Below are positions 5,765 through 53,704 of a stretch of DNA of 64,000 bases, piece after piece. The stretch is from Anolis carolinensis (Eukaryota). Position numbers and translations under genes: made by a program. The notes beneath the pieces were generated by a model. The model saw only the letters and a list, made by a program, of their open reading frames with translations. It made no database searches and had not been told where the DNA came from. Location of the stretch: positions 226,316,107-226,380,106 of the forward strand of contig NC_085844.1 of assembly GCF_035594765.1 (NCBI RefSeq), given 5' to 3'. Each line of letters opens with the position of its first letter. The first letter of the stretch is position 1.

Positions 5765-6425
5765 AATTCTTCCGTTCCAACCTGAAAACATGGATGTTCA
5801 GACAGGCCTTTCACCTTGAATAGGGTGAATGCCCCCATATGAAGCTGACACTTGGCACTTTGTGAATTGAGGGCAGTTATCTACTGTTGTTTCAAAATTG
5901 TATTACTTTTATTTTATGCTATATGTGTTGATAGAGTTGCTGTTACATTTTTATGTGACTTGTTTTAGACTTTTGTACCATATTTACCTGTTGTATGTTA
6001 TATGTGCACCCTGGAGTGCCTTGTAAGATGCCCCAAGTCCCTTCGGGGAGATGGTGGCGAGATAGCGTTCCCTCACTACTTCAAGGTTCGCTTTTCACAC
6101 CCTCGCTGTTTTGTGGGTTTTTAATAAACATTAAAATAATACTATAAAACATAAAATAATATATATCCCTTATAAATCCTTCTTTCTACTTCCTTCCTAA
6201 GTAGAAGCCTAAGGAAGGGAGTGAAAAGGAGGCTGAAGCAGCTGTTTTCGCCTCACAGGGCAGCGGCAGATGCGCGTGCTTGAGGGGCAAGAGGGGACAG
6301 AGACACTACTTTCAAACAACACAAATATAGCGTCCCTACTTCACGAATTTTCACTTTTTGCGGGTGGTCCTTAAACATAACATAAGGGAACACTGTATAA
6401 ATTAAGTGTATTACTATTATTATTC
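5765..6425 (+). mobile_element. L2-like LINE 3' end, interrupted by a Mariner-type MITE
   Basis: 3' terminal motif tgtaagatgccccaagtcccttcggggagatggtggcg at ~6022-6060; the (tta)-rich tail resumes after 6397. Confidence 0.55.
6063..6395. mobile_element. Tc1/Mariner-type MITE
   Basis: Inverted ends tagcgttccct...agggaacactg followed by ta. Confidence 0.6.
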
Positions 6426-6706
6426 TTGTCTTCTGTCTAGCTGAATGTTTTCTTTTAGTAGCATCATGATTGAGATATGATAGCAGGAGACATTGTTGGC
6501 ATCAGGTTGCAATGGTATGTCTGTAGTAAACAACAGAATTGAGCTTGAGCTGGGAAAGAGAAAGATTCCACTCCAGCTCATTTTTTTTCAGCTGTGTGTG
6601 CCTGCTTACAACAGGCAAGGTAAACAGCAGCTGCCTCCAGAATATTCTATTTAGCAAATGTCAGCAGCAAAACAGAGAAAGGAATAGACAGATAAATACC
6701 CTAAAG

Positions 6707-6805
6707 CAGTGTTTCTCAAACTCTGCTCCTCCAGGTGTTTTGGACTTCAGCTCCTAGAAATCCCAGCCAGCTTACCAGCTGTTAGGAATTGTGGGAGTGG
6801 AAGTC
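6707..6805. mobile_element. hAT MITE fragment
   Basis: cagtgtttctcaaac terminus; ccaggtgttttggact core shared with copies at 7869, 8405 and 11014. Confidence 0.6.
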
Positions 6806-9442: not shown

Positions 9443-10520
9443 TGGGTTGCTGTGAGTTTTCCGAGCTGTATGGCCATATTCCAGAAGCATTCCCGCCTGA
9501 CGTTTCGGCCACATCTATGGCAGGCATCCTCAGAGGTTGTGAGGTACATTGGAAACTAGACAAGGTTTATATATATATCTGGAATGTTCAGGGTGGGAGA
9601 AAGAACTCTTGTCTGTTTGAGGCAAGTGTGAATGTTGCAGTTAATCACCGTGATTAGCATTGAATAGACTTTCAGCATCAAAGTCTGGCTGCCTACTGCC
9701 TGGGGGAGTCCTTTGTTGGGAGGTGTTAGCTGGCCCTGATTGCGTCTTGTCTGGAATTCCCGTCTTCTGAATGTGGTTCTCTATTTACAGTCCTGATTTT
9801 AGAATTTAATATGGCTAGCCAGGTTTTGTTCATTTTCATGGTTTCCTCCTTTCTGTTGAAATTGTTCACATGCTTTTGGATTTTAATGCCTTCTCTGTGT
9901 AGTCTGACGTGGTGGTTGTTAGAGAGGTCCAGGATTTCTGTGTTCTCAAATAATATGCTGTGTCCAGGTTGGTTCAAGTGCTCTGCTATGGCTGACTTCT
10001 CTGGTTGAGTTAGTCTGCAGTGCCTTTCATGTTCCTTGACTCGTGTTTGGGCTCTGCGTTTCGTGGTCCCTATGTAGACTTGTCCACAGCTGCATGATAT
10101 ACAGTAGACTCCTGCAGAGGTGAGAGGATCCCTTTTGTCCTTTGCTGAATGTAGCATTTGTTGGATTTTCTTTGTGGGTCTGTAGGTAGTTTGTAGGTTG
10201 TGATTCTTCATCAGCTTCTCTATGTGGTCAGTGGTTCCCTTGATGTATGGTAAGAACACTTTTCCTCTGGGTGGATTTTTGTCTTTACTCATGTGGCTTG
10301 TTCTTGGTCGTGCAGCTCTTCTGATGTCTGTGGTGGAGTTTCCCCCACGCTGGATCTTCCACAGATATATAAACCTCCCTTGTCTAGTTTCCACAACCTC
10401 TGAGAATGCCTACCATAGATGTGGGTGCAACGTCAGGAGAGAATGCTTCTGAAACATGGTCTACAGTCTGGAAAACTCACAGCAACCTAGTAATTTCGAC
10501 CATTAAAGCCTTCGACAACA
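9443..10520 (-). mobile_element. 5'-truncated Penelope-like element with GIY-YIG endonuclease remnant and inverted pLTR
   Basis: ORF 9726-10394(-) contains GVYCISCSCGQVYIGTTKR...RVKEH; terminal segment ~9444-9585 is repeated in inverted orientation at ~10355-10488. Confidence 0.9.
9496..9536 (-). ncRNA. Minimal hammerhead ribozyme motif in the Penelope pLTR
   Basis: Minus strand reads CCU CUGAGGA U GCCUGC CAUAGAU GUGGCC GAAA CGUC AGG: core boxes intact, stem I CCU/AGG. Confidence 0.7.
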
Positions 10521-11013
10521 CACTTGTTTTAGTATAATATACGAATAGTGCTGCATTCAACAGAGGAAGCTTTACTCAGTATAATATTTATTCTGTAGGA
10601 TTTTGCCTGCTTATTTATTTATTTCGTGTCAAAAGCATTGTACAACAAATACATTTCAAATAATGGAAATATGTCTGCGCTCACAATGTTTCTCTATAAA
10701 GTCATGAAAATATTTCTGCCTTGGGTTCCACTTGTTGGGAAATTCTCCCAAAAATAGCACAGTATCCAAAAATATAAACAAGATATTTTATTGAACAGTC
10801 AGCTCACATCAAGCAGGAAGATGAAGTGTTGTGTGGCTGCAAGAGGATTTTTGAGTTTAGCAGGCAAAGATTCAGAGTTCAATCTTTAAAGTTACCAAAA
10901 ACGTTTATTTACAAAATATAAGAGCTACATTCCTTGATAGGAAATAATTGGGTCTAAGCTTCACACTAACTCCATAACGTCTAAGTTTCAAAACCTGTTG
11001 ATATACTCTATAA

Positions 11014-11137
11014 CAGGCATGGGCAAACTTGAGTCCTCCACATGTTTTGGACTTCAACTCTGACAATTCCTAACAGCCAGTAGGAATGTGGGAGTGAAGT
11101 CCAAAACACCTGGAGGGCTGAAGTTTGCCCATGCCTG
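11014..11137. mobile_element. hAT MITE
   Basis: TIRs caggcatgggcaaactt...aagtttgcccatgcctg; 8-bp TSD ctctataa. Confidence 0.9.
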
Positions 11138-11357
11138 CTCTATAAGCTAGCTAGCATTGCTCTCCCCCCCCCCCCCCCCAATGTGCGACAGGAAGTTGCT
11201 GTCAACTGTGAGAAAAATAATGTTGAATACTGTGAAAGCCACTGCATGGCTATCAGCCTCCTCCCACTAGACTCAAATCAAGGAAAGTTTCATGAGAACC
11301 ACCACTCCTCTTAATGTTTGTTCAGCAACAGCAAGAATATATTTGTGGGCAGCAAAA

Positions 11358-11561
11358 CCAGTGTGAGAGAATTGGTCTACAGAGACGTTGCCCAGGGGAC
11401 ATCCGGATGTGCTACCATCCTGCTGGGAGGCTTCTCTCATGTCCCCACAAGCTAGAGCTGATAGACGGGAGGTCACCCCATATCCCAGATTCAAACTGTC
11501 AACCTTCAGGTCAGCAATCCAGCCGACACAAGGGTTTAACCCATTGCGCCACCGCAGCTCC
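11358..11561 (-). mobile_element. Anolis SINE2-like SINE
   Basis: Reverse complement of the 8021-8320 element, including the tRNA-like head. Confidence 0.8.
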
Positions 11562-11997
11562 TACATCAGGAGTACAAAAAAGTCCTATGGGGGGCTTCAG
11601 GGGGTCAGGGTTTATTTTGAATCTATAACTTGAAAAATTCACAGTTTTTTCAGTTTGTATTAACTATGAGCTGTGGTTATAGTCAATGAAGCATAATGAA
11701 CAATTGGATCTATTGTGCTGATAAACCTTTTTCAAGCTAGGCTCACATCATCTTTTAGCATCCATTTATACTATATGGTGTTCACACACAGGCAGTGTAG
11801 AACGAAAGCAGTTCCATCCATGACCAGATGAAATATTAATATTAACGTGTTAGTTGTGCTTGGTTTAGATACTGATGTGAAATGTAGCCCAAGCAGAGTA
11901 TGTCAATTTGCACATTTTGTATCAGAGTTTTAGCAAACTTGGTATTTGACTTCTCTTATAGCACAGTTTATCTTTGTAGAAAGAAAAAGCTGTAATC

Positions 11998-12133
11998 CAG
12001 TGGTTCTCAACCTGGGGTCCCAAGATGTTTTTGGCCTTCAACACCCAGAAATCCTAAGAGCTGGTAAAGTGGCTGGGATTTCTGGGAGTTGTAGGCCAAA
12101 AACATCTGGGGACCCCCAGGTTGAGAATCACTG
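11998..12133. mobile_element. hAT MITE
   Basis: TIRs cagtggttctcaacctgggg...ccccaggttgagaatcactg; near-palindromic; relatives at 25949-26081 and 41232-41326. Confidence 0.8.
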
Positions 12134-13982
12134 CTACAGTCTCTGAAGATGACATCTAAATTAACATGCTTTTTAGTTCAATAGAAGCAGACTGCTCTTA
12201 GTGTTTGATTTGAATACATTTCTTTCCCTGATTGTTATACATTCTTTAAGTTGCAGAAATAGCGGCCTAGTTCATGTTACCATTTTCTGGTTTGCTAAAA
12301 TAAGATTAGAATGAGGTTTTGGCTTTGACTGTCTTTGTGTCTTCCTTCACAGTGCAAACAGTAATATCAGGAAGACTGTTAACCACAGCTTCCTGTTCTG
12401 TTTGTTACAGGAGTCTGTGGCTGCCAGCTTTCTAAGAGTGCAGGATATTAAACCAATTTGTAGTCTTCCATGCTGGCTTGTTCTGAAGTTAGTAATCATA
12501 ACTTTCTGGTTTTGACAAAATTATGGTCAGTTAGACTTACTGGTTTGCTACTTTCACAAAGGAGCAAAAGGACTGCATAAGTAGGTGACGGATACATTCA
12601 TTTCTTAACATACCTATCTGACAATGGCCACTGTTGTGAACAAATTGCGACCTACTATAACCCGCTTCGCTTCTTATGTTTTTATCTTGCTGAAATGTGG
12701 TGTAGTGGTGGTCATGGTTTGTCATCAAGTCTAATCAGGATACGTCTAGTTTGATTGGAAACCATGGTGAGCATACTATACTTAGTTTCTAAGCAAACCA
12801 TCATTGCATCTTTATCATAGTTCAGCAAAAGTCCAAGACCTTTTCTTTGTATTTCTTTAACCTTTAAGGTCTGAGTCTTCATTCTTTTCCTTAACAGTCA
12901 ATTACTTATTGGATTGTAAACCTTTGGTTAGTTTGTTCCCCATGCAATGAGAAAGGCCGGATATAAAGTACATATAAATTAATAAAGATTTCCTTCTAAT
13001 TGTTGAACTGAACTAAGTTTTGAGATTCTCAAAAAGTAGTATTAAAATGTCATTGATGACTTGGAATGGTGCATCATACATAAACATATTCTCATATCTA
13101 TATTTGTATTACAAAAGCCAAACCAAAAAAATGGAAGCTTGCCTTCTATATCAGAACTTTGAATCCAGTATTCATTTCAGCTCTTTGTGAAAGTAGCCTG
13201 TTTTTTTGTATTTTCTGCCATTCATCCATTTGGCAGGTTAGCATTTCAGGAAGCAGTCTTTTACTAACCACTTCCTTTTGTGTCTTCATCCTTGCCTGAT
13301 TGAACACTTGGTATGTACATCAAACTCATTATGACACAGCCATCCTTCTAGATGTGTCATAATGACATCCAAGCAGGAGACAACTGAGAAACATGTCTGA
13401 ATTAAACAATTTCAGAGCGAACAAACACCAGCTGATGGAGTAGGAAGGGAATTGTGCCAAGTGAGCATTTTTTCATATAGTTTTTGTGCTGCTTTTATCT
13501 TTTTTTAATCAATTCCTACAAACTCTTAAATCTTCCACTTTTTTTGGAATATGCACAGTATCAGTCACAACTTGATCAAAACCATGCTCAGTGGGATTTG
13601 AGATGTCAGCACGTATGTCAGTTCCATTTATTCAGTGAATTTCATGGAATCATAGAGTTGGAAGAGACCACAAAGGCCATCCACCCCAATCCCCTGCCAT
13701 TCAGGAACACAGAATCAAAGCACCCATGGCAGATTTTTGAATTAATGATTATATTTAAGCCACAATTTTAATAGGTTTTCAGTGTGTTTTACATAGAACA
13801 GATACTAGTATTTATATTGACTCTCCTTGAAATCTAATTTTCCATGTCAGGTAGTGTTTATGGTTGAGTACTTCAGCATTATGATTCCTGTCCTCCCGTC
13901 TGAAGTGGTTTCACAGGTTGCTGTCTTCTCACCAAGACAGCAATCTGTCCATGCCTTGAGAGAGAATTTGTGGATGTAGATA

Positions 13983-19868: not shown

Positions 19869-20888
19869 TCTTGCTCCACAATTGCGATGAATTCATCCAG
19901 TGGGGAAATTTATGGAGTCTGCTCTCTAAATGGTGTTATTTTTTCTGATTTCTCAGTCTGCACTTCTTAGATGTGGATGCAGGCCAGGTTTGGAAATCTG
20001 CATAAAGACTGAAAAATGTATCCACTAAATGCACACATTTGAAAAGTGCAAATAGAAAAATTCACAGATTTTAGGGAAGCACTCAAAGTTTTGGTAAATT
20101 GGTGGCTATGTGCAATAATTAATGTAATGTGTGCTAAAGAAGGATGAACTTGTGTCCACACAAAATGTCCACAGAACACTAGAGACCACACTTAAGGTGC
20201 AAGAAAAGAAAGAAACTTTCTTGTGAGTTGTGCAGATTCTTAAATTTGACCAGTACTATTTACATTGGTTCATAAATATTTTCAATTTTGTTTGCTAGCG
20301 GAATCTTCTGAAATTAATTTTCAAGCTGTTGACTACAGAGATTTTTATTTTGTTTATAGTCAAAAAAGCAATGTACATTGAAACTGTTTACATTTTAAAA
20401 AGAGGGGTGTTAATGCCTATTATGATGACTGTTTTTAAAGGAAGTAATAAGACTGATTTGTGTAGAAATTGAAATTTCAAAATGTTATGTTTGCATGATG
20501 TATTACACTTGTTGAAATTCCAGATTCCCTTTTCTACATGACTACTAAAGCTAGAAGCCTCATCTTCTTTTTGATCTTAATGCTTTAATGCCACTCTACC
20601 AAAAAAGCTATATCTCATGCAGGCAATGCAGCCGGTTCCTTGTACTAAACACTGCATGGTATACATTCATGAACTGTTTGCAGAGCTAGCACTTGCCATC
20701 CACATCTGGATTGTGGAAGCATTTTGTTGTGCCAGATAAGTGGGAAAAATGAGAATTTGAGAAGTAGCACAAAGATGTGTTTTTCCTTAATGCCATCTAA
20801 AAATCTACCCAATGGTGTATTTGTTTCCCTGCCATGAGGAGGAGATGCCAATAATTTCTCTGTGGTGAAGTGATATAAGGTCCCGTAG

Positions 20889-21733
20889 TGTGATGCCTCA
20901 TGGGCCTTGTAGTCCTGCTCCTAGTGCCATCGTGGCAGATGAAGACGAAAACATGGGGTTTTCGCCGGTTCAGCAAGAGCCGGAGTCCTTTCACCTGCCG
21001 GATGTTGATGTTTGTCCCCAAGAATTCAGTAAAACAGACCTTGGGCATTCCTCGCCTCCGTTCCCTAGAAAAGAATCCTACTGTGCTGACAGAGGAGTCA
21101 GGGAACAAAATCGCAGGAGTTTACGGATTGCTGCCAAACAACAGGCTGATTAGACCTGCTTCCCTTGGGAAATTCTAAGGAGTCTTGCATCTGGACAAAG
21201 TTGGGTTTCGCTTCCCGTTCCCTAGGGAAAGAGATTGTTGGCGGGAAAACGAGACCCCAATATAGGTGCCTGACGCGGGAGAATCTTTGCAGAGTCAACA
21301 GAGCAGCTTCAGGAGTAAGATCGTGTGTGGACTTCGTAACCCCAGTTCCTTGTTTCCCGGATTAAGTATTCAAGACTTGCCTCGCTTTGCTTTCAACCAC
21401 GGACCTTGTTCTAAGAATCACTGTTTGCCTTGTATCCAGCCTTGTTTCCAGCCTTGTTGTCAAGCTACCTAGGACTCCTGAGACTCAGACATTTCCCCAC
21501 ACTATTGCTTGGCAATAGTGTGTGTTTCGGTATTGGATAAAGAACTTTGAACTCTAATATCATTTATTGGACAATACATTTTTGGACTATATTTGACCTC
21601 ATTTGAAAGGTCTGCTTCTGAACTATATTCTTCACTTGTTTTTATTGTTTTTATATAATTCCTTAATAAAGATATTAGAAAGAGATTGGCCTCTGTGTAT
21701 GGTTCTTGGTGCCCTGCTGCCAGGGGTCTGACA
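20889..21733 (+). mobile_element. Gypsy-type solo LTR (845 bp)
   Basis: TG...CA termini; perfect 5-bp TSD cgtag; TATA-like aatatag near 21259; AATAAA near 21665; homologous to 52859-53704. Confidence 0.9.
20890..21153 (+). CDS. LTR U3-encoded reading frame (87 codons), putative C-terminal segment of a retroelement protein
   Basis: Open from LTR nt 2 to TAG; amino-acid similarity, with synonymous changes at shared residues, to the frame in the second solo LTR. Confidence 0.55.
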   Translation: MMPHGPCSPAPSAIVADEDENMGFSPVQQEPESFHLPDVDVCPQEFSKTDLGHSSPPFPRKESYCADRGVREQNRRSLRIAAKQQAD

Positions 21734-23879
21734 CGTAGTACATGGCTTTGGAATTCCACATTGTGCCAGGAAATGGGAATAGTAAACCCTGACATAGTGA
21801 ATCTGGAAGGATGCTTAAAGCAGTTTCTTGCAACTAAAGCTGTGTAATGAAACCTGATTTTGAGAGTTGTGGAGTGTTGATATTTAAGTCTTTATGAAGC
21901 ATCCAGGATGCGCAAACTTGATTGTAATGGACCGCTGTTCAGCTCTAAATCTGAAATTGGTATTAGCGGGCAGTGAGGGAGATAATTGGGTGTAGAGTTA
22001 ATGTGAAAATTCTTTGCACCTAACCATTATAATGGTTAATGCATCAGAAGTAACACAGATTAGCTCTCTATTTGCATTTGCTGTTATAGAATGAATTTCC
22101 TGTAATGGGCTCAGGAAATAGCATACATTTTCAATTTCAGTGTTGAGTCTCTTGCATGAGATGATTGAGAGCAAAGGAGCTGAAAATTGTGATGAGTTTC
22201 CAATGTTTTATTTCTTATTCTTCCTGCTTCAGTTTCTTGGAATAGGTATGTTTTGGGTGGGGCCACCCTGGCACCTCCGTTTTCTTGTCCATATGAAAAC
22301 AAAAATGCTACTAGTCGCTAGCAAATTGGTTTAGCATCGCAAACATCCAATTTAAGAGATTACTCCAATTGAAATGAGAAAGTAGTAAACATATGGAGCA
22401 GAGAGTGTTTGTGAGTGTATAAAACACTAGATACAAGTGAGTAAAATGTATTAATAGAACCCATTGGAAAAAAAACTTCCAGCTGTGTTAAGATCACTGA
22501 AGGCCCTAAAGCTTTTCTGAGGGTGTATTTTCTGTGTTAAGGACAGCCATTAAATGAACAAGGAGACCTTCCACTGAGGGAGGTTAGAGACTTGCTGCAG
22601 CCTCTGAAAATACTGGCTCTGTGGTTCCAAGCAAGCATGACTGTAGGAACCAAAGGAAATTCCTGTAATGGCTTTAGTAAGGCAATACTTATGGGGCATC
22701 CTCCCCTTAGTGGTACTACCGGTACAGACATTGACTTCATTTTGGCACCATGTTTAATACAGCCTTTTTAGCCTAATGACTTTCTCCCCAGTATGTACAT
22801 GTATGTGATTTCAACTGTTCTAACTGGTTTTACTTTAAAAATAATTTAATACATTTAAAATGTTATTTTTTTTACTGCTTCACTTTTTGTTAAAATCTAT
22901 TTTATTGTATTTTGCTCCGAGATCTTTGAATATAGAGCAGGAGACAAATATTTTAAGAAATGTTGTAATAAATGTCTAAACGCCTCCAAAAGGAGTATGA
23001 GTTAGTTGTTTGCTTTCTGGGCAGTAATTTGTTTTTTCTCTCTAGTTCTTTTAGTTCTGTGTAACTATTAGAAAATCTACCTATGTAGTTCAGTTGGTTT
23101 GTAGTCACGTAGACAAATGCATGCTGGCTGATCTCATGCAGTCGCTCATCATCTCTGCTGGGCTAAAAATCAATCGTTAGTCTCAGAGCAGACCTTTTGT
23201 AAGTCCTATTGATTAGGTGGGTGTGCTCCAGCTGTGACTAAATGTGAGTTAGGCCAGAAGCGGGAATTGTGTAGCCCTTCAGGTATCCTTCAACTACAAC
23301 TCTCGGCATGCATTCTTACCCAGTATGAACCAATTGTGGGAAATGCTATCCAGAAGGCATCATGATTCTTTCTCAACTTTTAGTGCACTTCATTTTAATA
23401 ACGGAGACATCCTCATACAGCTGGCAAAGGTGGTATATCCAAAACGTGTGTTGACATTTGTAGGGAAGTCATTGCCCATGTAAATCCAGATAAAATAAAA
23501 ATTGATCCTTATTTAAAATTAAAGCAGTATTTTTCAAATAGATAGCCACAGTAGTGGAAGATCAAAAGCAACAACCTATTCTCATTTACAGGAAAATGGT
23601 ATTCCAACTAATCCATTATTATTTTGGTATAGTTTCCTTATAGTCAACACTATCACAAACAGCTGGAAGAGTGCATGGATTTGGAGATAATGAAATTTGT
23701 GGTTGCTCCTGAATGGTAAAATCTCAAGGTTCTCTGTAACTCAGTTATAATAGGGGTATGTATCAATCCCAAAATGTGGTTTGGCATGGGATCTGGCAAC
23801 TTCCTTAAGATTTGGTGATTTCTTTTTTTAATGTCTATGCCTTTTTTTAAATTAGGGGTGGGATTGGGGAGCTTCAATA

Positions 23880-34481: not shown

Positions 34482-34784
34482 TGTCAGAACCCTGCTACTA
34501 GAGCCTGGATGTGGCTCTGAGTTTCAGGGTCACTGACATTGATAAGACACCTGCGGCTCAGGACTCGGAGAAGAAACGGCTGCTGGACTTGGCGGGGAAT
34601 TTGCGCGGGGTTTTACTGAGCGGGAAGAGACTTTTCAAATGAGGGGGAGGGTATATAAAGGATGGTTGGCCGGAGCCTCCCATTCTTGGCTTTTTTGATG
34701 TTCATGTTTCCTACAGTAAAAGTTTCTGGTGATATCACAGAGAGTCTCGTGTGTTCATTCAGGAGCGGCTGTGGTGAGCTGACA
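34482..34784 (+). repeat. 5' LTR
   Basis: TATA tatataaa (34652-34659), Inr-like ccAttc at 34682, AGTAAA (34715-34720); no differences from the 3' LTR found by eye. Confidence 0.97.
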
Positions 34785-34786
34785 CT

Positions 34787-34797
34787 AAGCCAAGAAT
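34787..34797 (+). promoter_or_regulatory. Self-priming primer binding site
   Basis: aagccaagaat is the exact reverse complement of attcttggctt (34682-34692), the predicted first 11 nt of the transcript; no TGG tRNA-type PBS is present. Confidence 0.85.
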
Positions 34798-34832
34798 ACG
34801 GACACCATCCCGCTGTAGCGGTGAGGTGTAAC

Positions 34833-37800
34833 ATGCAAGTGGAGGATGAAGAGCTCTTGGGCGCAGGAGGAGGAAGGTCAGAAAGGGCCACTCCCGAGCC
34901 GGACGCTGAGTTCCACCAGCTGGCGGCCCTGGCGTCATCCACCGCTTATGCCCAGCCAAATGGGGTAACCCAGAGGCGTGGAGTGGTGCGGGGAGACAGC
35001 ACCGGAGGAGAGGAAGGTTCACCTTCCCCAGGCCCACAGAGGATGGTGTTTCTGGAGGAGAGGATGTCGGCGATGGAGACCACCCTGGCAGTGATGTCGA
35101 GGGCGATGGAGCGCCTGGCGTTTTTGGCGGAGCCAGAGAGAGGAAGGGAACTTCGGGCTGGCTCAATGTGGGACGTGAGCGTGGGAAGCAGCCAGGGCTT
35201 TGCAGACCTCCCAGCACCGAAGGGAAGGGAAATGCGAAAGGAGCCCGGCGCCCGGCCCAAGACCCAAACAAGCCTGACGCGGGTGGAGGAGAGTGACGAC
35301 GAAGGGGAAAAACCTCCGAGAATCCCAGCTACGCTCCCAGCTGAGACCCTGGTGCCCCTGGCGAATGCCGGGCGTGGCACAGGGCCAAGAGAAGCAGCAG
35401 CGGGGCCCACTGGTCCGCAAGGGGGCTTGCGACGGGCGGAGAATTGGGGATTGCCACCACAGGGACCCCTACCAAGACGAGAGGAACTAAGGATCGAGTT
35501 TGGGGGAGAGTCCTCTGAACTGGATTTTTTCCTGACCACGGTGAGGGGCTATATGGAGGACAATGCTCATACTTTTAGAACGGAATCCAGCCGGATACGG
35601 GCCATTGGTGCAGTGTTGAAGAGGGGAGCGGCCAGCTGGTACGTTCAGCTGCACGCGCGGCGCGACCCATGTCTGGGGTCACTCCGACGCTTTATGGGGG
35701 CCCTGGAGACCCGTTTCCGAGATCCACTGGAGCAGATCCGGGCGAGGGAGAAGTTGAAGACCGTCTCCCAGGGGCAGAGGTCGGTATCTGAGTATGCGGA
35801 GGAGTTCCAATGCCTCGCCGAAAAGGTGCCGGAATGGTCTGCAGTAACAAAGATAGAACTCTTCAAAGAGGGTCTCAGGCGGGAGATCCTCTCCTGGGCG
35901 GTGCATCGTGATGAGCCTGACACACTGCGCGGATGGATTCAGCTGGCGGGGCGCGTCGAGACATCGCTGGCCCAGGCGAGGAGGCACCGAGGAGGGCTAC
36001 AGCAGCGGCCGCAGATGAAAGAGGGGAGCCGGAAGGAGGGATCAACCCCAGCCGGGAGGAGAACGGAGCCGACAGGGAACGTGAGCGCCAGCAGGAGTGG
36101 CTGCTTTGTGTGCGGCCGGTTGGGCCACAGGGCTGCCGAGTGCTGGCAGAGAAAAGGGGAAGGCGGAGGCCCGCCCAAACCAAGAGCCGTGGCAGGGAAA
36201 CGCGCCGAGGAAGAACCACCGATGAGGCACCACTCGGGGGGGTTGGTAAGTCAGGACAAAGCTATGATAGTGGTCCCCATTCAGCTTGAAAATGGCAGCA
36301 AACAAGCAACCTGCAAAGCATTTGTGGATTGTGGATGTTCCAGGAACATCATCTCCCCTGAATTAGCCGAGGGATTGGGATGCGAAAGAACGAACCTAGA
36401 ATCCCCAATAGCTTTTTCGCAGTTGGACGGATCCACAGCATCGGGATCGTTAGCTAAGTACAGTGCCGAAGATGTAAAGTGTAAGATAGGGAGTTGGGAA
36501 GGAAAGGTGTCATTTGTGATATCACAAATAGCCAGCTATAATGTTATACTAGGCATGCCGTGGCTGGGGCAGGCCAACCCGCAAATCAACTGGGAGGATA
36601 AGAGCATGATCTTCAGGATGAATTTGGAGGAAGGGGAGAGGGAGCCAGGGAAAAGGGGGGAGGAAGACTCTATCAGAATAGCAGAACTGGCAGATAAATT
36701 ACCCCCAGAGTATCGGGATTTTGTGGACGTGTTTGATGAGAAGGAAGCAGACAATTTCCCACCGAAGCGGAGAGTTGAAGTGAAAATAGAGCTAGTCCCA
36801 GGAGCAGAGCTTCCCAAGGCAAAAATATACCCGATGTCAGCTAGGGAAAAGGAGGAACTGAGAAAATACATTGATAAAAACCTAGCGAGGGGTTTCCTAG
36901 AGCCTTCAAATTCCCCTTTAGGGGCGCCTGTGTTGTTCAGGCGGAAAAAGGACCAAACGCTGAGGCTCTGCATTGACTACAGGGGCCTAAATGCAATCAG
37001 TACTGTAAATAAATACCCCCTACCCTTAGTGAAGGACTTGATCGCCCAGTTATCGGAAGGACAGATATTCACTAAATTGGACTTAATTGAGGCCTACCAT
37101 AAATTGCAGATCAAACCAGAGGACAGGTGGAAGACGGCCTTCTCCTGCGCATTCGGATTATTCAATTATCGTGTGCTCCCCTTCGGTTTGTGCGGGGGAG
37201 GGGCCGCGTTCATGCAATTAATCAACGAAGTATTGCATCCATTGTTGTACAAGGGAGTCTTTATTTTTTTAGATGACATATTGATAATGTCTCGGACTAA
37301 GGAGCAACATGTAGAACTAGTCAGGGAAGTCCTACAAAAGTTGAGGGAAGCGAAACTGTATGCGAAGCTTGCCAAGTGCGAGTTCAATAAAGACCAGATA
37401 GACTTTCTGGGGTATAGGATTTCCTCCCAGGGAGTGGCGATGGACCCTGCGAAGGTGGAAGACGTGAGGGGGTGGGAAGCCCCCAAAACACGGAAGCAGC
37501 TGCAATCCTTCCTAGGGTTCGCAAACTTCTATAGAACATTTATCAAGGACTTTGCGCGCCTCACTTTGCCATTAACGGATTTGTTAAAAACTAAAGGCAG
37601 GGGAGAAACAGCCAAAGTGAAGGCCCCAGGGGCCAAACTGACATGGACAATAGAATGCCAGGAAGCTTTCGAAGCCCTTAAAAAGCGTTTTACTGAGGAA
37701 CCTGTCCTACAGCACCCTGATATGTCTAAGGCCTTTGTATTACATTGCGATGCGTCAGACCGGGCATATGGGGCAGTTCTGCTGCAGAAAGACGAGGGGG

Positions 37801-39437
37801 GGAACCTGAAGCCATGTGGCTATCTGTCAAAAAAGTTTAGCGATACAGAAAAAAACTGGCCGATTTGGGAGAGAGAAGCCTTAGCGATTCTAAAAGCACT
37901 AGAGTGCTGGAGACACTTTCTGGAAGGAAGTGGAACACCGTTTGAGGTGTGGACTGATCATAGAAATTTACAGTATCTAAGATCCCCTCGTAAACTATCA
38001 GCGAAGCAAATTAGATGGGCCCAATATTTCAGCCGTTTTGATTTCAGACTCAGATTCTTCCAGGGGAAACATAACATACTCGCTGACGCTCTCTCTCGGA
38101 TGCCTCAGCACGGGGGAGGAATTCAGGAATCTGAAGGGAGCCTGTTCCTAGATAAGCAATGGGGCCTGGCAGTACTAACTCGAGCACAAGCGGCCAAAGA
38201 AAACAAACGTACTGCCATTTCCACGGGGGGAGGAGAAATATGGGAGGAAGAGTTGAAACGAGCGTATGGAATGGACAAATGGTTACAAACTAACAAAGAA
38301 AAGGGAGAATTGTGTGGGGATTTGGTGTTTGTAAATAAGAAATTGTATATTCCTGAATGTTTAAGACGAGAAATGTTAAGGAAGTGCCACGATAACAAGG
38401 GTGCGGGTCATCTAGGCCCCACCAGGACTATTAAACTGTTGGCCAAACAATGCTGGTGGCCCGGAATGAGGAAAGACGCCAGGGGGTACGTCACGCAGTG
38501 TGAATTATGTGCAGAGGGAAAAACACCACCGGGGAAGCCCCAGGGGCTATTGCAGAAGGTGGTGGAGCCCATGAGGCCATGGGAATGCGTGGCCATGGAT
38601 TTTGTAGGCGAACTACCCCCCAGCAGAGGCCACAGATACATTTGGACAATATTGGACCTATTCTCAAAACAGGCACACTTTGTGGCCCTGCCAAAACTCC
38701 CCTCAGCTGAAAAACTTGCTGATTTGTATGTGAAGCATGTATATCGCCTACATGGGTGTCCCGACAAAATAATTAGCGACCGGGGAGTCCAATTTACTGC
38801 AAAATTTTGGGGAAAATTCTTACAGCTGTTAGGAGCAGAAAGGAACCTGAGCTCGGCTTTTCATCCCGCAACCAACGGGGGAGTCGAACGCACCCAACAA
38901 ACACTGTGCCAATTCTTGAGGATGTACACCAATTATAGACAGGATGATTGGGCGGACCTTCTTCCGTTTGCTGAGATGGCTTTTAACGGGGCCGTACATT
39001 CGGCCACAGGTCGTGCCCCATTCGAAATAGTATACGGACAGGAGGTGGCACCTTTCCCCAGGCTACCCGAGTGGAAGGAAGGAGAGGGCCAGACCGACAA
39101 GGAATGGCCGGCCAAAATTAAGCAAGGGTGGCAGAACGTGGTGGAGGCATTGCGGGAAACACAAAAGAAGTACAAGCTCTTTGCAGATCGCAGGCGCCGA
39201 GAGGGGGACAAATTGGGCGAAGGGGATCTGGTTTGGCTGAGCACAAAAAACCTGAAATTGGGGTTCCCATCTAAAAAATTGGCTCCACGCTATATAGGGC
39301 CGTTCAGGGTAGCAAAAAGAATAAACGAAGTGACCTATGAGCTGAGGCTACCCAAGGACCTAGGAAAGGTACACCCGGTATTCCATTGCAGCCTGTTAAA
39401 AAAGTATAAAGGAACTCTGGACAGCGGAGAACAATAG
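34833..39437 (+). CDS. Gag-Pol polyprotein (1534 aa): capsid, CCHC knuckle, protease, RT, RNase H, integrase
   Basis: First in-frame ATG after the PBS; CFVCGRLGHRAAEC; FVDCGC; LPFGL and FLDD; CDAS...TDH; H-x6-H...CELC; MDF/SDRG/VER; YIGPF and HPVFH. The domain order RT-RH-IN is the Gypsy order. Confidence 0.95.
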   Translation: MQVEDEELLGAGGGRSERATPEPDAEFHQLAALASSTAYAQPNGVTQRRGVVRGDSTGGEEGSPSPGPQRMVFLEERMSAMETTLAVMSRAMERLAFLAEPERGRELRAGSMWDVSVGSSQGFADLPAPKGREMRKEPGARPKTQTSLTRVEESDDEGEKPPRIPATLPAETLVPLANAGRGTGPREAAAGPTGPQGGLRRAENWGLPPQGPLPRREELRIEFGGESSELDFFLTTVRGYMEDNAHTFRTESSRIRAIGAVLKRGAASWYVQLHARRDPCLGSLRRFMGALETRFRDPLEQIRAREKLKTVSQGQRSVSEYAEEFQCLAEKVPEWSAVTKIELFKEGLRREILSWAVHRDEPDTLRGWIQLAGRVETSLAQARRHRGGLQQRPQMKEGSRKEGSTPAGRRTEPTGNVSASRSGCFVCGRLGHRAAECWQRKGEGGGPPKPRAVAGKRAEEEPPMRHHSGGLVSQDKAMIVVPIQLENGSKQATCKAFVDCGCSRNIISPELAEGLGCERTNLESPIAFSQLDGSTASGSLAKYSAEDVKCKIGSWEGKVSFVISQIASYNVILGMPWLGQANPQINWEDKSMIFRMNLEEGEREPGKRGEEDSIRIAELADKLPPEYRDFVDVFDEKEADNFPPKRRVEVKIELVPGAELPKAKIYPMSAREKEELRKYIDKNLARGFLEPSNSPLGAPVLFRRKKDQTLRLCIDYRGLNAISTVNKYPLPLVKDLIAQLSEGQIFTKLDLIEAYHKLQIKPEDRWKTAFSCAFGLFNYRVLPFGLCGGGAAFMQLINEVLHPLLYKGVFIFLDDILIMSRTKEQHVELVREVLQKLREAKLYAKLAKCEFNKDQIDFLGYRISSQGVAMDPAKVEDVRGWEAPKTRKQLQSFLGFANFYRTFIKDFARLTLPLTDLLKTKGRGETAKVKAPGAKLTWTIECQEAFEALKKRFTEEPVLQHPDMSKAFVLHCDASDRAYGAVLLQKDEGGNLKPCGYLSKKFSDTEKNWPIWEREALAILKALECWRHFLEGSGTPFEVWTDHRNLQYLRSPRKLSAKQIRWAQYFSRFDFRLRFFQGKHNILADALSRMPQHGGGIQESEGSLFLDKQWGLAVLTRAQAAKENKRTAISTGGGEIWEEELKRAYGMDKWLQTNKEKGELCGDLVFVNKKLYIPECLRREMLRKCHDNKGAGHLGPTRTIKLLAKQCWWPGMRKDARGYVTQCELCAEGKTPPGKPQGLLQKVVEPMRPWECVAMDFVGELPPSRGHRYIWTILDLFSKQAHFVALPKLPSAEKLADLYVKHVYRLHGCPDKIISDRGVQFTAKFWGKFLQLLGAERNLSSAFHPATNGGVERTQQTLCQFLRMYTNYRQDDWADLLPFAEMAFNGAVHSATGRAPFEIVYGQEVAPFPRLPEWKEGEGQTDKEWPAKIKQGWQNVVEALRETQKKYKLFADRRRREGDKLGEGDLVWLSTKNLKLGFPSKKLAPRYIGPFRVAKRINEVTYELRLPKDLGKVHPVFHCSLLKKYKGTLDSGEQ

Positions 39438-39461
39438 TTGTGTTTAATCTTTTCCTTCCAG

Positions 39462-39503
39462 GACGAAGGGGAGGAGGACGCCATGTCAGAACCCTGCTAC
39501 TAG
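39462..39503 (+). CDS. Predicted terminal exon of spliced Gag (DEGEEDAMSEPCY*)
   Basis: Acceptor tttaatcttttccttccag ending 24 nt after the pol stop; joins in phase 0 to the donor TTG|gtaagt at 36245/36246. Confidence 0.6.
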   Translation, partial: DEGEEDAMSEPCY

Positions 39504-39786
39504 AGCCTGGATGTGGCTCTGAGTTTCAGGGTCACTGACATTGATAAGACACCTGCGGCTCAGGACTCGGAGAAGAAACGGCTGCTGGACTTGGCGGGGA
39601 ATTTGCGCGGGGTTTTACTGAGCGGGAAGAGACTTTTCAAATGAGGGGGAGGGTATATAAAGGATGGTTGGCCGGAGCCTCCCATTCTTGGCTTTTTTGA
39701 TGTTCATGTTTCCTACAGTAAAAGTTTCTGGTGATATCACAGAGAGTCTCGTGTGTTCATTCAGGAGCGGCTGTGGTGAGCTGACA
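39484..39786 (+). repeat. 3' LTR
   Basis: Direct repeat of 34482-34784. Confidence 0.97.
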
Positions 39787-52858: not shown

Positions 52859-53704
52859 TGTGACACCTCAGGGCAGCGTGAGCACTGGGAATCAGACACG
52901 AAGGCCAATAAACAATCTAATATCTTTATTAAGGAAATAAAGGAGACAACTAAAAATAAGCAGAGTATATAGTCCAGCAGTAGACATTTCAGGAAAGGTC
53001 ATATATAGTCCAGTAATATGAAAGTAGATGTCCAGTATTAGAGTTCAAAGTTTTAAATCCAATAACCGAAACACACTCAAACCTTTAGGCTGTTTGAGTG
53101 GGGATTAAGGCAAGATCTGTCAAAGAGTTCCAGGGCTCAAATCCGAGGCTAGGATGCAAGGCAAGGCAAAGTTAGTCGTGGTAAAGCTGAATCGCTGTCC
53201 AGGCTTGACAGGGAGATGAGATGCAATGCTGGTCTACTCGAGAGTAGCGCACTGCAGAACTAGAGTCGATGTGAATTCCTCAACTGACATGTTGAACACC
53301 GCAAAAGCCAGTTGGCACCCAGAACTTTTATGGGACTTTGCTCTCCTCTCCAGCCAGGTGTCTGAAGTCTTTCCCAAGGGAAAATGACTAAAGTCAACAA
53401 CTTGCAAGATGCAATCCTCCCTGAGAACTCTCAAGAGAACTGGCTTAATTAACGCTTGCTTTCTCCGCTAATCGAGCGCTTCTCCTCAAAATCTGCTTTT
53501 CCTCGCGCGAAGCCTCCCAAAACAATTAGCGGTCAAACCTAGCATTCTCTGGAGAACCGGGCTGTGAGTCAAGGCCCTTTTTAATGAACTGTGGGCTAAA
53601 ACTGTCAACAGGGGACATCTGGAAAGGAGCGGAATCCCATCTCTTCTTCGGTTTGCTCCGTAATGGCGACGGGGTCATGACTCGGGGGTCTCTGAGACAC
53701 TACA
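52859..53704 (-). mobile_element. Gypsy-type solo LTR (846 bp), diverged relative of 20889-21733
   Basis: TG...CA termini; 5-bp TSD acagc/atagc; shares tctaatatctttattaagga and flanking sequence with the reverse complement of the first solo LTR. Confidence 0.9.
53445..53703 (-). pseudogene. Disrupted U3 reading frame homologous to 20890-21153
   Basis: VVSQRPPSHDPVAITEQTEEEMGF ... (one frameshift, one stop) ... QILRRSARLAEKASVN*. Confidence 0.55.

What the first reader, a model, noticed from the sequence alone, without database searches (positions are those of the whole stretch)
20890..21153. Two diverged solo LTRs conserve a U3-encoded peptide ending in an HMGN-like RRSxR(L/I)AxK motif
Seen: both solo LTRs (20889-21733 + and 52859-53704 -) have a frame open from LTR nt 2, upstream of the TATA-like box. 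The first 24 codons align without gaps (VMPHGPCSPAPSAIVADEDENMGF vs VVSQRPPSHDPVAITEQTEEEMGF, 10 identical). Six of the identical residues differ synonymously (GTG/GTA, CCT/CCC twice, ATC/ATT, GGG/GGA, TTT/TTC). Both frames end in RRSLRIAAK / RRSARLAEK, four residues before the stop, again with different codons (CGC/AGG, AGG/AGA, AGT/AGC, CGG/CGA, GCT/GCG). This is the signature of protein-level selection inside an LTR. Known: RRSARL is the core of the HMGN nucleosome-binding domain that docks on the H2A-H2B acidic patch; KSHV LANA and foamy virus Gag use similar arginine anchors for chromatin tethering. Inference: this Gypsy lineage encodes a chromatin-tethering tail in its 3' LTR, attached to integrase by read-through or to Gag by splicing (compare the intact element in this window), possibly replacing a chromodomain.
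Basis: partly seen in the sequence, partly recalled or inferred. Interest (0 to 1): 0.9.

Follow-up and report, generated by a model that had tools for sequence, protein, structure and literature searches.

The report
LTR relic of integrase's chromatin tail
The open frame at the start of these lizard solo LTRs is a silent leftover of the last ~86 codons of a chromodomain-bearing Gypsy integrase that reads past the polypurine tract into its own LTR and ends in the RRSxR peptide that HMGN, Dsup and yeast Dot5 use to grip nucleosomes; whether this tail binds nucleosomes is untested.

Summary
Both solo LTRs are real: TG..CA ends and 5-bp target duplications. LTR1 carries an intact 87-codon frame from LTR nt 2. 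LTR2 does not: its frame stops after 32 codons, and its RRSARLAEK lies in another frame behind a further stop.

The frame is not a separate U3 gene. At least 24 Anolis carolinensis proteins, and one full-length element I fetched (L001), run integrase zinc finger, core, SH3 and an HP1-like chromodomain through the purine tract into the 3' LTR. They add 85-97 residues that end in RRS[AL]RIAA[KR]. LTR1's frame differs by 2 residues from one such tail (P0010).

Between two subfamilies the tail has dN/dS 0.20. The same bases read in the other two frames give 0.92 and 1.12.

The motif matches three peptides shown by experiment to bind the nucleosome acidic patch: HMGN RRSARLSA, Dsup RRSSRLTS and Dot5 RRSARIAT. 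The tail is not an HMGN family member, as it has no Pfam hit.

The tail follows a chromodomain rather than replacing one. The window's intact element is a different, tail-less Gypsy lineage.

Coding that runs into the 3' LTR is known from plant CRM retrotransposons. I found no paper describing an HMGN-like integrase tail. This scan has already noted the same feature many times elsewhere in this genome. Nucleosome binding is inferred only.

The parts
20884..20888 (+). Target-site duplication CGTAG, 5' copy, of solo LTR1
   Evidence: Read from the sequence. The identical pentamer is at 21734-21738.
20889..21733 (+). Solo LTR1, 845 nt, TG..CA. It belongs to a young subfamily of an Anolis chromovirus.
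   Evidence: There is no purine tract upstream and no primer-binding site downstream. tblastn with P0020 hits only the tail part.
20890..21153 (+). Relic of the integrase tail: 87 codons from LTR nt 2, plus the TAG stop. It is silent here because no pol lies upstream; a stop sits 7 codons before the LTR.
   Evidence: E 9e-41 against a profile of 24 Anolis tails. It differs by 2 residues from the tail of P0010. dN/dS against L001 is 0.20.
21112..21138 (+). HMGN-like motif RRSLRIAAK, four residues before the stop
21260..21266 (+). TATA-like ATATAGG, downstream of the coding part of U3. This is a reading of the sequence, not a test.
21665..21670 (+). AATAAA polyadenylation signal, in the block conserved between the two LTRs
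21734..21738 (+). Target-site duplication CGTAG, 3' copy
52859..53704 (-). Solo LTR2, 846 nt, TG..CA. It is an older, strongly diverged relative. Its duplication is GCTAT (53709-53705) and GCTGT (52858-52854).
53608..53703 (-). LTR2 tail relic, piece A: 32 codons from LTR nt 2, ended by TGA at 53607-53605
   Evidence: It gives a weak profile hit to tail positions 3-27.
53529..53606 (-). LTR2 tail relic, piece B: 26 codons in the +1 frame, ended by TAA at 53528-53526. At least one frameshift therefore lies near 53615-53595.
53448..53525 (-). LTR2 tail relic, piece C: 26 codons in the +1 frame, holding RRSARLAEK (53486-53460). The stop TAA at 53447-53445 falls in the same alignment column as the stops of LTR1 and L001.
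   Evidence: (profile positions 70-91)

Best explanation
What it is. The frame is the end of the Gag-Pol (integrase) ORF of an Anolis chromovirus, a Ty3/Gypsy element with an HP1-like chromodomain. In the full element, pol does not stop before the polypurine tract. It reads through the tract ('..GLEEGDS') into U3 of the 3' LTR from LTR nt 2, and adds 85-97 residues. Reverse transcription copies U3 to both ends, so every LTR of the family carries a silent copy, solo LTRs included. LTR1 holds a young, intact copy. LTR2 holds an old copy from a far more diverged family, broken by a frameshift and stops.

How it probably works. The tail evolves faster than the integrase body but is under purifying selection. 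It keeps two islands: an acidic EEEN[LM]GF block near its start, and RRS[AL]R[IL]A[AE][KR] four residues from the end. I infer that the arginines of the second island dock on the H2A-H2B acidic patch, as in HMGN, Dsup and Dot5. Together with the chromodomain reading a methylated H3 tail, this would give the intasome a two-point hold on a nucleosome during integration.

Shown: the ORF continuity, the selection, and the conservation of the motif. Inferred: any binding.

The confidence given is for the identity of the frame. For acidic-patch binding I put about 0.5.
For: - A HMMER search of 1.84 billion representatives with the LTR1 frame gave two relevant hits; both carry the tail at their C-terminus.
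- Word-indexed searches gave A. carolinensis integrases with Integrase_H2C2, rve, SH3_Tf2-1 and Chromo domains, followed by the tail.
- 24 distinct tails all start after the same purine-tract-encoded linker.
- L001 is a full element. Its 880-nt LTRs differ at 2 positions and its duplication is GCATG. One stop-free piece, 9578-11515, runs from integrase through the purine tract into the 3' LTR for 85 codons.
- dN/dS between LTR1 and L001 is 0.20 (bootstrap 0.085-0.39). The other two frames give 0.92 and 1.12. Differences by codon position are 21, 17 and 35.
- Tail lengths of 85, 87, 92 and 97 residues differ by whole codons.
- The three arginines use different codons in the three LTR types. The anchor position reads CGG, AGA and CGA.
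- The motif is close to validated binders: HMGN RRSARLSA and Dsup RRSSRLTS (cryo-EM, PMC12487698), and Dot5 RRSARIAT, in which R6, R7 and R10 are required for nucleosome binding (PMC13347269).
Against: - No binding, expression or translation data exist.
- No Pfam HMG14_17 match, even at E up to 10. The likeness is 8-9 residues only.
- LTR1's subfamily has L at motif position 4, where all validated binders have A or S.
- No full-length element of LTR2's family was found. Its tail pieces match the profile only weakly (E 0.68 and 2.6 per window).
- All tail-bearing proteins come from one species.
- The structure model was uninformative (mean pLDDT 38).
Confidence: 0.88

Rival explanations
1. The tail is a real, selected part of integrase, but its C-terminal basic motif does something other than dock on the acidic patch. 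Candidates are nuclear or nucleolar import, cDNA or RNA binding, a phospho-regulated switch, or binding of another host factor.
For: Selection and conservation show constraint, not its cause. Many subfamilies carry L at motif position 4, unlike the validated binders. There is no HMGN profile match. Short basic motifs serve many functions.
Against: RRSARIAA, found in many copies, matches Dot5's tested RRSARIAT at 7 of 8 positions (PMC13347269). All three arginines needed in HMGN, Dsup and Dot5 are kept with changed codons. Chromatin tethering is the expected role of an integrase C-terminal extension that sits next to a chromodomain.
Confidence: 0.35
2. The frame is an independent U3 gene, an accessory protein as in MMTV sag or lentiviral nef, or an N-terminal extension spliced onto Gag.
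For: All Anolis copies have ATG as codon 2. Two UniRef gene models join the first 24 (P0008) or 39 (P0043) tail codons to gag.
Against: The frame continues from pol in L001 and in at least 24 proteins. LTR2 has GTG at that codon. U3 of a 5' LTR lies upstream of the LTR's own start site. The two models use different junctions, and L001 has no AG acceptor at the P0008 junction. Neither model keeps the conserved C-terminal motif.
Confidence: 0.04
3. The conservation lies in the DNA, as an integrase-binding LTR end, plus-strand priming signals or an enhancer, and the open frame is incidental.
For: The first ~27 nt are the most conserved part of the tail, and they adjoin the LTR terminus and the purine tract, where cis signals are expected. 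On the first 72 nt alone, LTR1 against LTR2 shows similar residue identity in all three frames: 10, 8 and 7.
Against: dN/dS is 0.20 in this frame and about 1 in the other two. Differences concentrate at third positions. Indels come in whole codons. The motif keeps its residues while the codons change. Nucleotide identity in the tail (0.65-0.79) is no higher than in non-coding U3 (0.76-0.82).
Confidence: 0.03

Closest known systems
Plant centromeric chromoviruses, CRM clade group A (Neumann et al. 2011, PMC3059260)
   Same: The polyprotein coding region extends past the polypurine tract into the 3' LTR, and the LTR-encoded part (the CR motif) is a putative targeting domain at the integrase C-terminus.
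   Different: In CRM group A the LTR-encoded CR motif stands in place of a canonical chromodomain. Here a complete HP1-like chromodomain precedes the LTR-encoded tail. The host is a lizard, and the motif is HMGN-like. Homology between the tail and the CR motif was not tested.
HMGN nucleosome-binding motif and HMGN-like motifs of Dsup and yeast Dot5 (PMC12487698, PMC13347269)
   Same: An R-R-S-x-R-[LI] core with three arginines in a low-complexity, probably disordered stretch. Tail variants are RRSARIAA, RRSLRIAA and RRSARLAE, against RRSARLSA, RRSSRLTS and RRSARIAT.
   Different: There is no family-level homology: no Pfam HMG14_17 hit. The motif sits at the extreme C-terminus of a transposable-element integrase. 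Many copies have L at position 4. Binding is untested.
Viral acidic-patch tethers: KSHV LANA N-terminus and prototype foamy virus Gag chromatin-binding sequence (my own knowledge; LANA is cited as Barbera 2006 within PMC12487698)
   Same: A short arginine-anchor peptide of a mobile genome that would hold it on host nucleosomes.
   Different: Those peptides sit in an episome-maintenance protein and in Gag, not in integrase, and their sequences are unrelated to RRSARL.
Integrase C-terminal tethering peptides: MLV integrase tail with the BET ET domain (PMC4027182), and Ty5 integrase with Sir4, Ty1 integrase with Pol III AC40, and chromodomains of Tf1/MAGGY-type chromoviruses (my own knowledge)
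   Same: A short linear motif or small domain at the integrase C-terminus that selects chromatin for integration.
   Different: Those bind a host adaptor protein or a histone mark. Here the proposed target is the nucleosome core surface itself, and the motif is encoded in the LTR.

Membership tests
Ty3/Gypsy chromovirus (integrase with C-terminal chromodomain) | Integrase zinc finger, catalytic core and SH3/GPY-F domain, followed by a chromodomain | tested here: met
   Pfam hits to Integrase_H2C2, rve, SH3_Tf2-1 and Chromo in P0004, P0006, P0007 and P0020. The chromodomain aligns to HP1 beta and alpha (E 1e-9), with F, W and F at the three cage positions.
Ty3/Gypsy chromovirus (integrase with C-terminal chromodomain) | LTRs with TG..CA ends and a 5-bp target duplication; the solo LTR belongs to the same family as a chromodomain-bearing element | tested here: met
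   LTR1's frame differs by 2 of 87 residues from the tail of P0010, which carries integrase and a chromodomain. For LTR2 the link is only by LTR homology and weak, collinear tail matches.
Elements whose pol runs into the 3' LTR (as in plant CRM group A) | An uninterrupted frame from integrase across the polypurine tract and the LTR boundary | tested here: met
   L001 has a stop-free piece at 9578-11515. The 3' LTR starts at 11260, and the purine tract GAGGAGGGGGA lies just before it.
Elements whose pol runs into the 3' LTR (as in plant CRM group A) | Sequence homology of the LTR-encoded part to the CR motif | not tested
HMGN protein family (Pfam HMG14_17) | Profile-level match to the HMGN family | tested here: not met
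   No Pfam family at E up to 10 for three tails and for the LTR2 motif piece. So this is not an HMGN family member.
HMGN-like nucleosome-binding motif (functional class: HMGN, Dsup, Dot5) | An RRS[AS]R[LI] core with three arginines at fixed spacing | tested here: met
   LTR2 has RRSARL, and many Anolis copies have RRSARI. LTR1 and its subfamily have RRSLRI, which keeps the arginines and the serine but has L at position 4.
HMGN-like nucleosome-binding motif (functional class: HMGN, Dsup, Dot5) | Binding to the nucleosome that depends on the acidic patch | not testable with these tools
   No histone sequence was on hand for complex prediction. PMC12487698 reports that AlphaFold 3 models HMGN2 on the nucleosome poorly.
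Retroviral U3 accessory genes (sag/nef type) | Own start codon or splice acceptor, with expression independent of pol | tested here: not met
   The frame continues from pol. LTR2 has no ATG at the start of the frame. Expression could not be examined.
LEDGF/TND-interacting motif (TIM with FxGF) | An FxGF portion, which is essential for LEDGF/HRP2 binding (PMC9987994) | tested here: not met
   The conserved block reads N[LM]GF in the Anolis tails and EMGF in LTR2. The first phenylalanine is absent.

The most novel reading that the evidence does not exclude
A vertebrate retrotransposon has independently acquired the HMGN/Dsup/Dot5 arginine-anchor peptide and encodes it inside its own LTR. Its integrase would then hold a nucleosome at two points: an HP1-like chromodomain on a methylated H3 tail, and the RRSxR tail on the H2A-H2B acidic patch. 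This would be the first integrase that docks directly on the acidic patch through an HMGN-type motif. It would also be a natural member of the 'untapped realm' of HMGN-like binders that PMC12487698 anticipates.
Probability: 0.45. Interest if true: 0.8.

Novelty: new variant of a known kind. Interest (0 to 1): 0.6.

Why it matters
How LTR-retrotransposon integrases choose and hold nucleosomes is known for only a few adaptors: Sir4, AC40, BET proteins, LEDGF and H3K9me-reading chromodomains. A tail that docks on the nucleosome core surface would be a new tethering route. It is simple to test with peptides and acidic-patch mutant nucleosomes.

It would also show that the HMGN-type motif has been taken up, or reinvented, by a mobile element.

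There is a practical point for annotation. Frames that look conserved and selected inside solo LTRs can be copies of the end of pol, and need not be new genes. In this genome they have already produced chimeric database proteins, for example a LINE reverse transcriptase fused to the tail (P0001) and an integrase named calmodulin-lysine N-methyltransferase (P0020).

Tried and rejected
No RNA or read evidence was obtained, read laying was not used, and I tried no other route to reads.
- The look-up of encoding contigs found no gene on record for P0001, P0004 or P0007, and no DNA for P0002 because the gene range was too long. Only P0020 gave a locus, L001.
- An AlphaFold2 model of SH3 + chromodomain + tail, from a 12-row alignment, had mean pLDDT 37.8. 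I did not use it and ran no fold search.
- The protein-atlas search on the tail gave no usable hit.
- A PDB sequence search with the tail gave only a non-significant vinculin linker match, E 3.7.
- The third homology search, with the P0042 tail, found no family that bridges to LTR2. LTR2's own pieces (26-32 residues) are too short for the length-limited search.
- The bacterial promoter/terminator scan of LTR1 does not apply to a eukaryotic LTR.
- I considered a LEDGF/TIM-like reading of the EEEN[LM]GF block. The FxGF feature is not met.

Full report
**The observation**

The window holds two solo LTRs.
- LTR1 (20889-21733, +) has TG..CA ends and a perfect 5-bp target duplication, CGTAG.
- LTR2 (52859-53704, -) has TG..CA ends and a 4-of-5 duplication, GCTAT and GCTGT.
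- Neither has a purine tract or a primer-binding site beside it.
- They are homologous but far apart. blastn aligns only the last ~190 nt, at 73.6%, E 2e-25. A global alignment gives 43-50% identity over U3.

LTR1's frame from nt 2 is open for 87 codons, up to the TAG at 21151-21153. LTR2's is not. It ends at a TGA after 32 codons. RRSARLAEK lies in the +1 frame, behind a further TAA.

On the first 72 nt alone the coding signal is modest:
- 10 identical residues, against 8 and 7 in the other frames (permutation p 0.07);
- 16 third-position differences, against 9 and 7 at positions one and two (p 0.008).

The pattern RRS.R[LI]..K occurs twice in the six-frame translation of the window. Both hits are in these LTRs, four residues before a stop. 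Shuffles predict 0.045.

**What it is**

A HMMER search of 1.84 billion representative proteins with the LTR1 frame found two relevant proteins, and both carry the match at their C-terminal end. Both are chimeric gene models. P0001 is a LINE reverse transcriptase that runs into an inserted LTR.

Word-indexed searches restricted to the tail then found Anolis carolinensis proteins of 505-517 residues. They hold the integrase zinc finger, the catalytic core, the Tf2-type SH3 domain and a chromodomain, followed by the tail. With their cluster members, 24 distinct tails are on hand. Each begins right after the same linker, '..GLEEGDS'. That linker is the translation of the purine tract.

P0010's tail differs from LTR1's frame by two residues. 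LTR1 therefore belongs to that subfamily.

One member, P0020, is on record in an A. carolinensis assembly, where it is named calmodulin-lysine N-methyltransferase. Its locus, L001, holds a full element:
- two 880-nt LTRs (5906-6785 and 11260-12139) that differ at 2 positions;
- a target duplication of GCATG;
- gag, then pol pieces;
- one stop-free piece at 9578-11515 that runs from integrase through GAGGAGGGGGATAG into the 3' LTR, from LTR nt 2, for 85 codons.

The 5' LTR carries the same frame. So the 'U3 peptide' is the end of integrase. No stop is read through and no splice is needed. Every LTR carries a copy because U3 is duplicated at reverse transcription.

**Selection**

Between LTR1 and the L001 LTR, which are two subfamilies, the tail gives dN 0.23, dS 1.15 and dN/dS 0.20 (bootstrap 0.085-0.39). 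The same aligned bases read in the other two frames give 0.92 and 1.12. Differences by codon position are 21, 17 and 35.

Nucleotide identity in the tail (0.65-0.79) is no higher than in the non-coding promoter part of U3 (0.76-0.82). The constraint therefore acts on the protein.

Across 91 protein pairs the integrase body is 96% identical at the median, and the tail 72%. The tail is the less conserved part in 89 of the 91 pairs. Tail lengths of 85, 87, 92 and 97 residues differ by whole codons. The best-kept blocks are the first nine residues, the EEEN[LM]GF block, SPPF, and the terminal RRS[AL]RIAA[KR]. Departures from the motif are single copies, as expected from decay after insertion.

The three arginines use different codons in the three LTR types on hand. 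The anchor position reads CGG, AGA and CGA.

LTR2's pieces match a profile of the Anolis tails only weakly: E 0.68 for the motif piece and 2.6 for the first piece, per window. They do match in the right order, on the right strand, and at the right distances from the LTR start and from the stop. LTR2's stop falls in the same alignment column as the other two. I read LTR2 as an old, decayed copy from a much more diverged family. No full-length member of that family was found.

**The motif**

Three peptides are comparable:
- HMGN proteins bind the nucleosome through RRSARLSA.
- Dsup binds through RRSSRLTS. Cryo-EM shows the arginines of both peptides on the H2A-H2B acidic patch, with the last arginine as the anchor (PMC12487698).
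- Yeast Dot5 binds nucleosomes through RRSARIAT, and R6, R7 and R10 are required (PMC13347269).

Many Anolis tails read RRSARIAA, which matches Dot5 at 7 of 8 positions. LTR2 reads RRSARLAE. LTR1 and its subfamily read RRSLRIAA, with L where all tested binders have A or S.

The tail is not an HMGN family member, since no Pfam family matches at E up to 10. The claim is 'works like', and it rests on 8-9 residues plus their conservation.

The chromodomain just upstream aligns to HP1 beta and alpha (E 1e-9), with aromatic residues at all three cage positions. The tail therefore adds to a chromodomain and does not replace it.

My model is a two-point hold on the nucleosome during integration. I put acidic-patch binding at about 0.5. 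A different role for the basic motif is the main rival.

**The window's intact element**

The element at 34482-39786 has identical 303-nt LTRs and a 1591-codon gag-pol frame. It is another Gypsy lineage:
- its integrase is 42% identical to P0020, and its gag-pol 35% identical to P0041;
- the frame ends just after the SH3 domain, 45 nt before the 3' LTR;
- it has no chromodomain and no tail.

It says nothing about the solo LTRs.

**What is known**

Coding that extends into the 3' LTR and encodes a putative targeting motif is described for plant CRM group A chromoviruses (PMC3059260). Integrase C-terminal tethering peptides are well known, for example the MLV tail with BET proteins (PMC4027182). 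I found no paper that links an HMGN-like motif to a retrotransposon integrase.

This scan has noted the same feature many times elsewhere in this genome: 81 notes hold the word HMGN. Earlier follow-up agents reached the same reading. I treated those notes as leads and re-derived each point here from my own searches.

**Limits**

- All tail-bearing proteins come from one species.
- DNA-level selection rests on one between-subfamily pair plus LTR2 in pieces.
- The structure model was uninformative.
LTR2 was compared only as separate pieces.

Noticed in passing
window 34482-39786 (+): An apparently intact, very young Ty3/Gypsy element. It has two identical 303-nt LTRs and a single 1591-codon gag-pol frame (34662-39437) with capsid, protease, RT, RNase H, integrase and SH3 domains. 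It has no chromodomain, and pol ends 45 nt before the 3' LTR. Its lineage differs from that of the solo LTRs (integrase 42% identical to P0020).
   Followed up: partly
proteins P0008 and P0043 (UniRef, Anolis carolinensis); compare L001:5906-6935: Two database gene models join the first 24 (P0008) or 39 (P0043) codons of the 5'-LTR copy of the tail frame to gag, at different junctions. L001 has no AG acceptor at the P0008 junction. They are probably annotation artefacts, but a read-through transcript with cryptic splicing was not excluded.
   Followed up: partly
window 20941-20961 (+) and 53652-53632 (-); tails of P0004-P0042: Besides the terminal motif, the best-kept block shared by LTR1, LTR2 and all Anolis tails is an acidic run ending in [LM]GF (DEDENMGF, TEEEMGF, DEEENLGF). 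It loosely recalls the acidic-linker plus FxGF part of LEDGF/TND-interacting motifs, but the first phenylalanine is missing. Its function is unknown.
   Followed up: partly
proteins P0001, P0002, P0020: LTR and integrase fragments of this family are built into public gene models. P0001 is a LINE reverse transcriptase fused to the tail. P0002 is a 166-residue model spread over about 174 kb. P0020 is an integrase-chromodomain-tail protein named calmodulin-lysine N-methyltransferase isoform X1 (XP_062825005.1), because the element lies inside that gene.
   Followed up: partly
L001:5736-6161: In the 5' LTR of the full element the tail frame happens to stay open for 57 codons upstream into the flanking DNA. 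The result is a 142-codon stop-free piece that could be mistaken for a gene.
   Followed up: no
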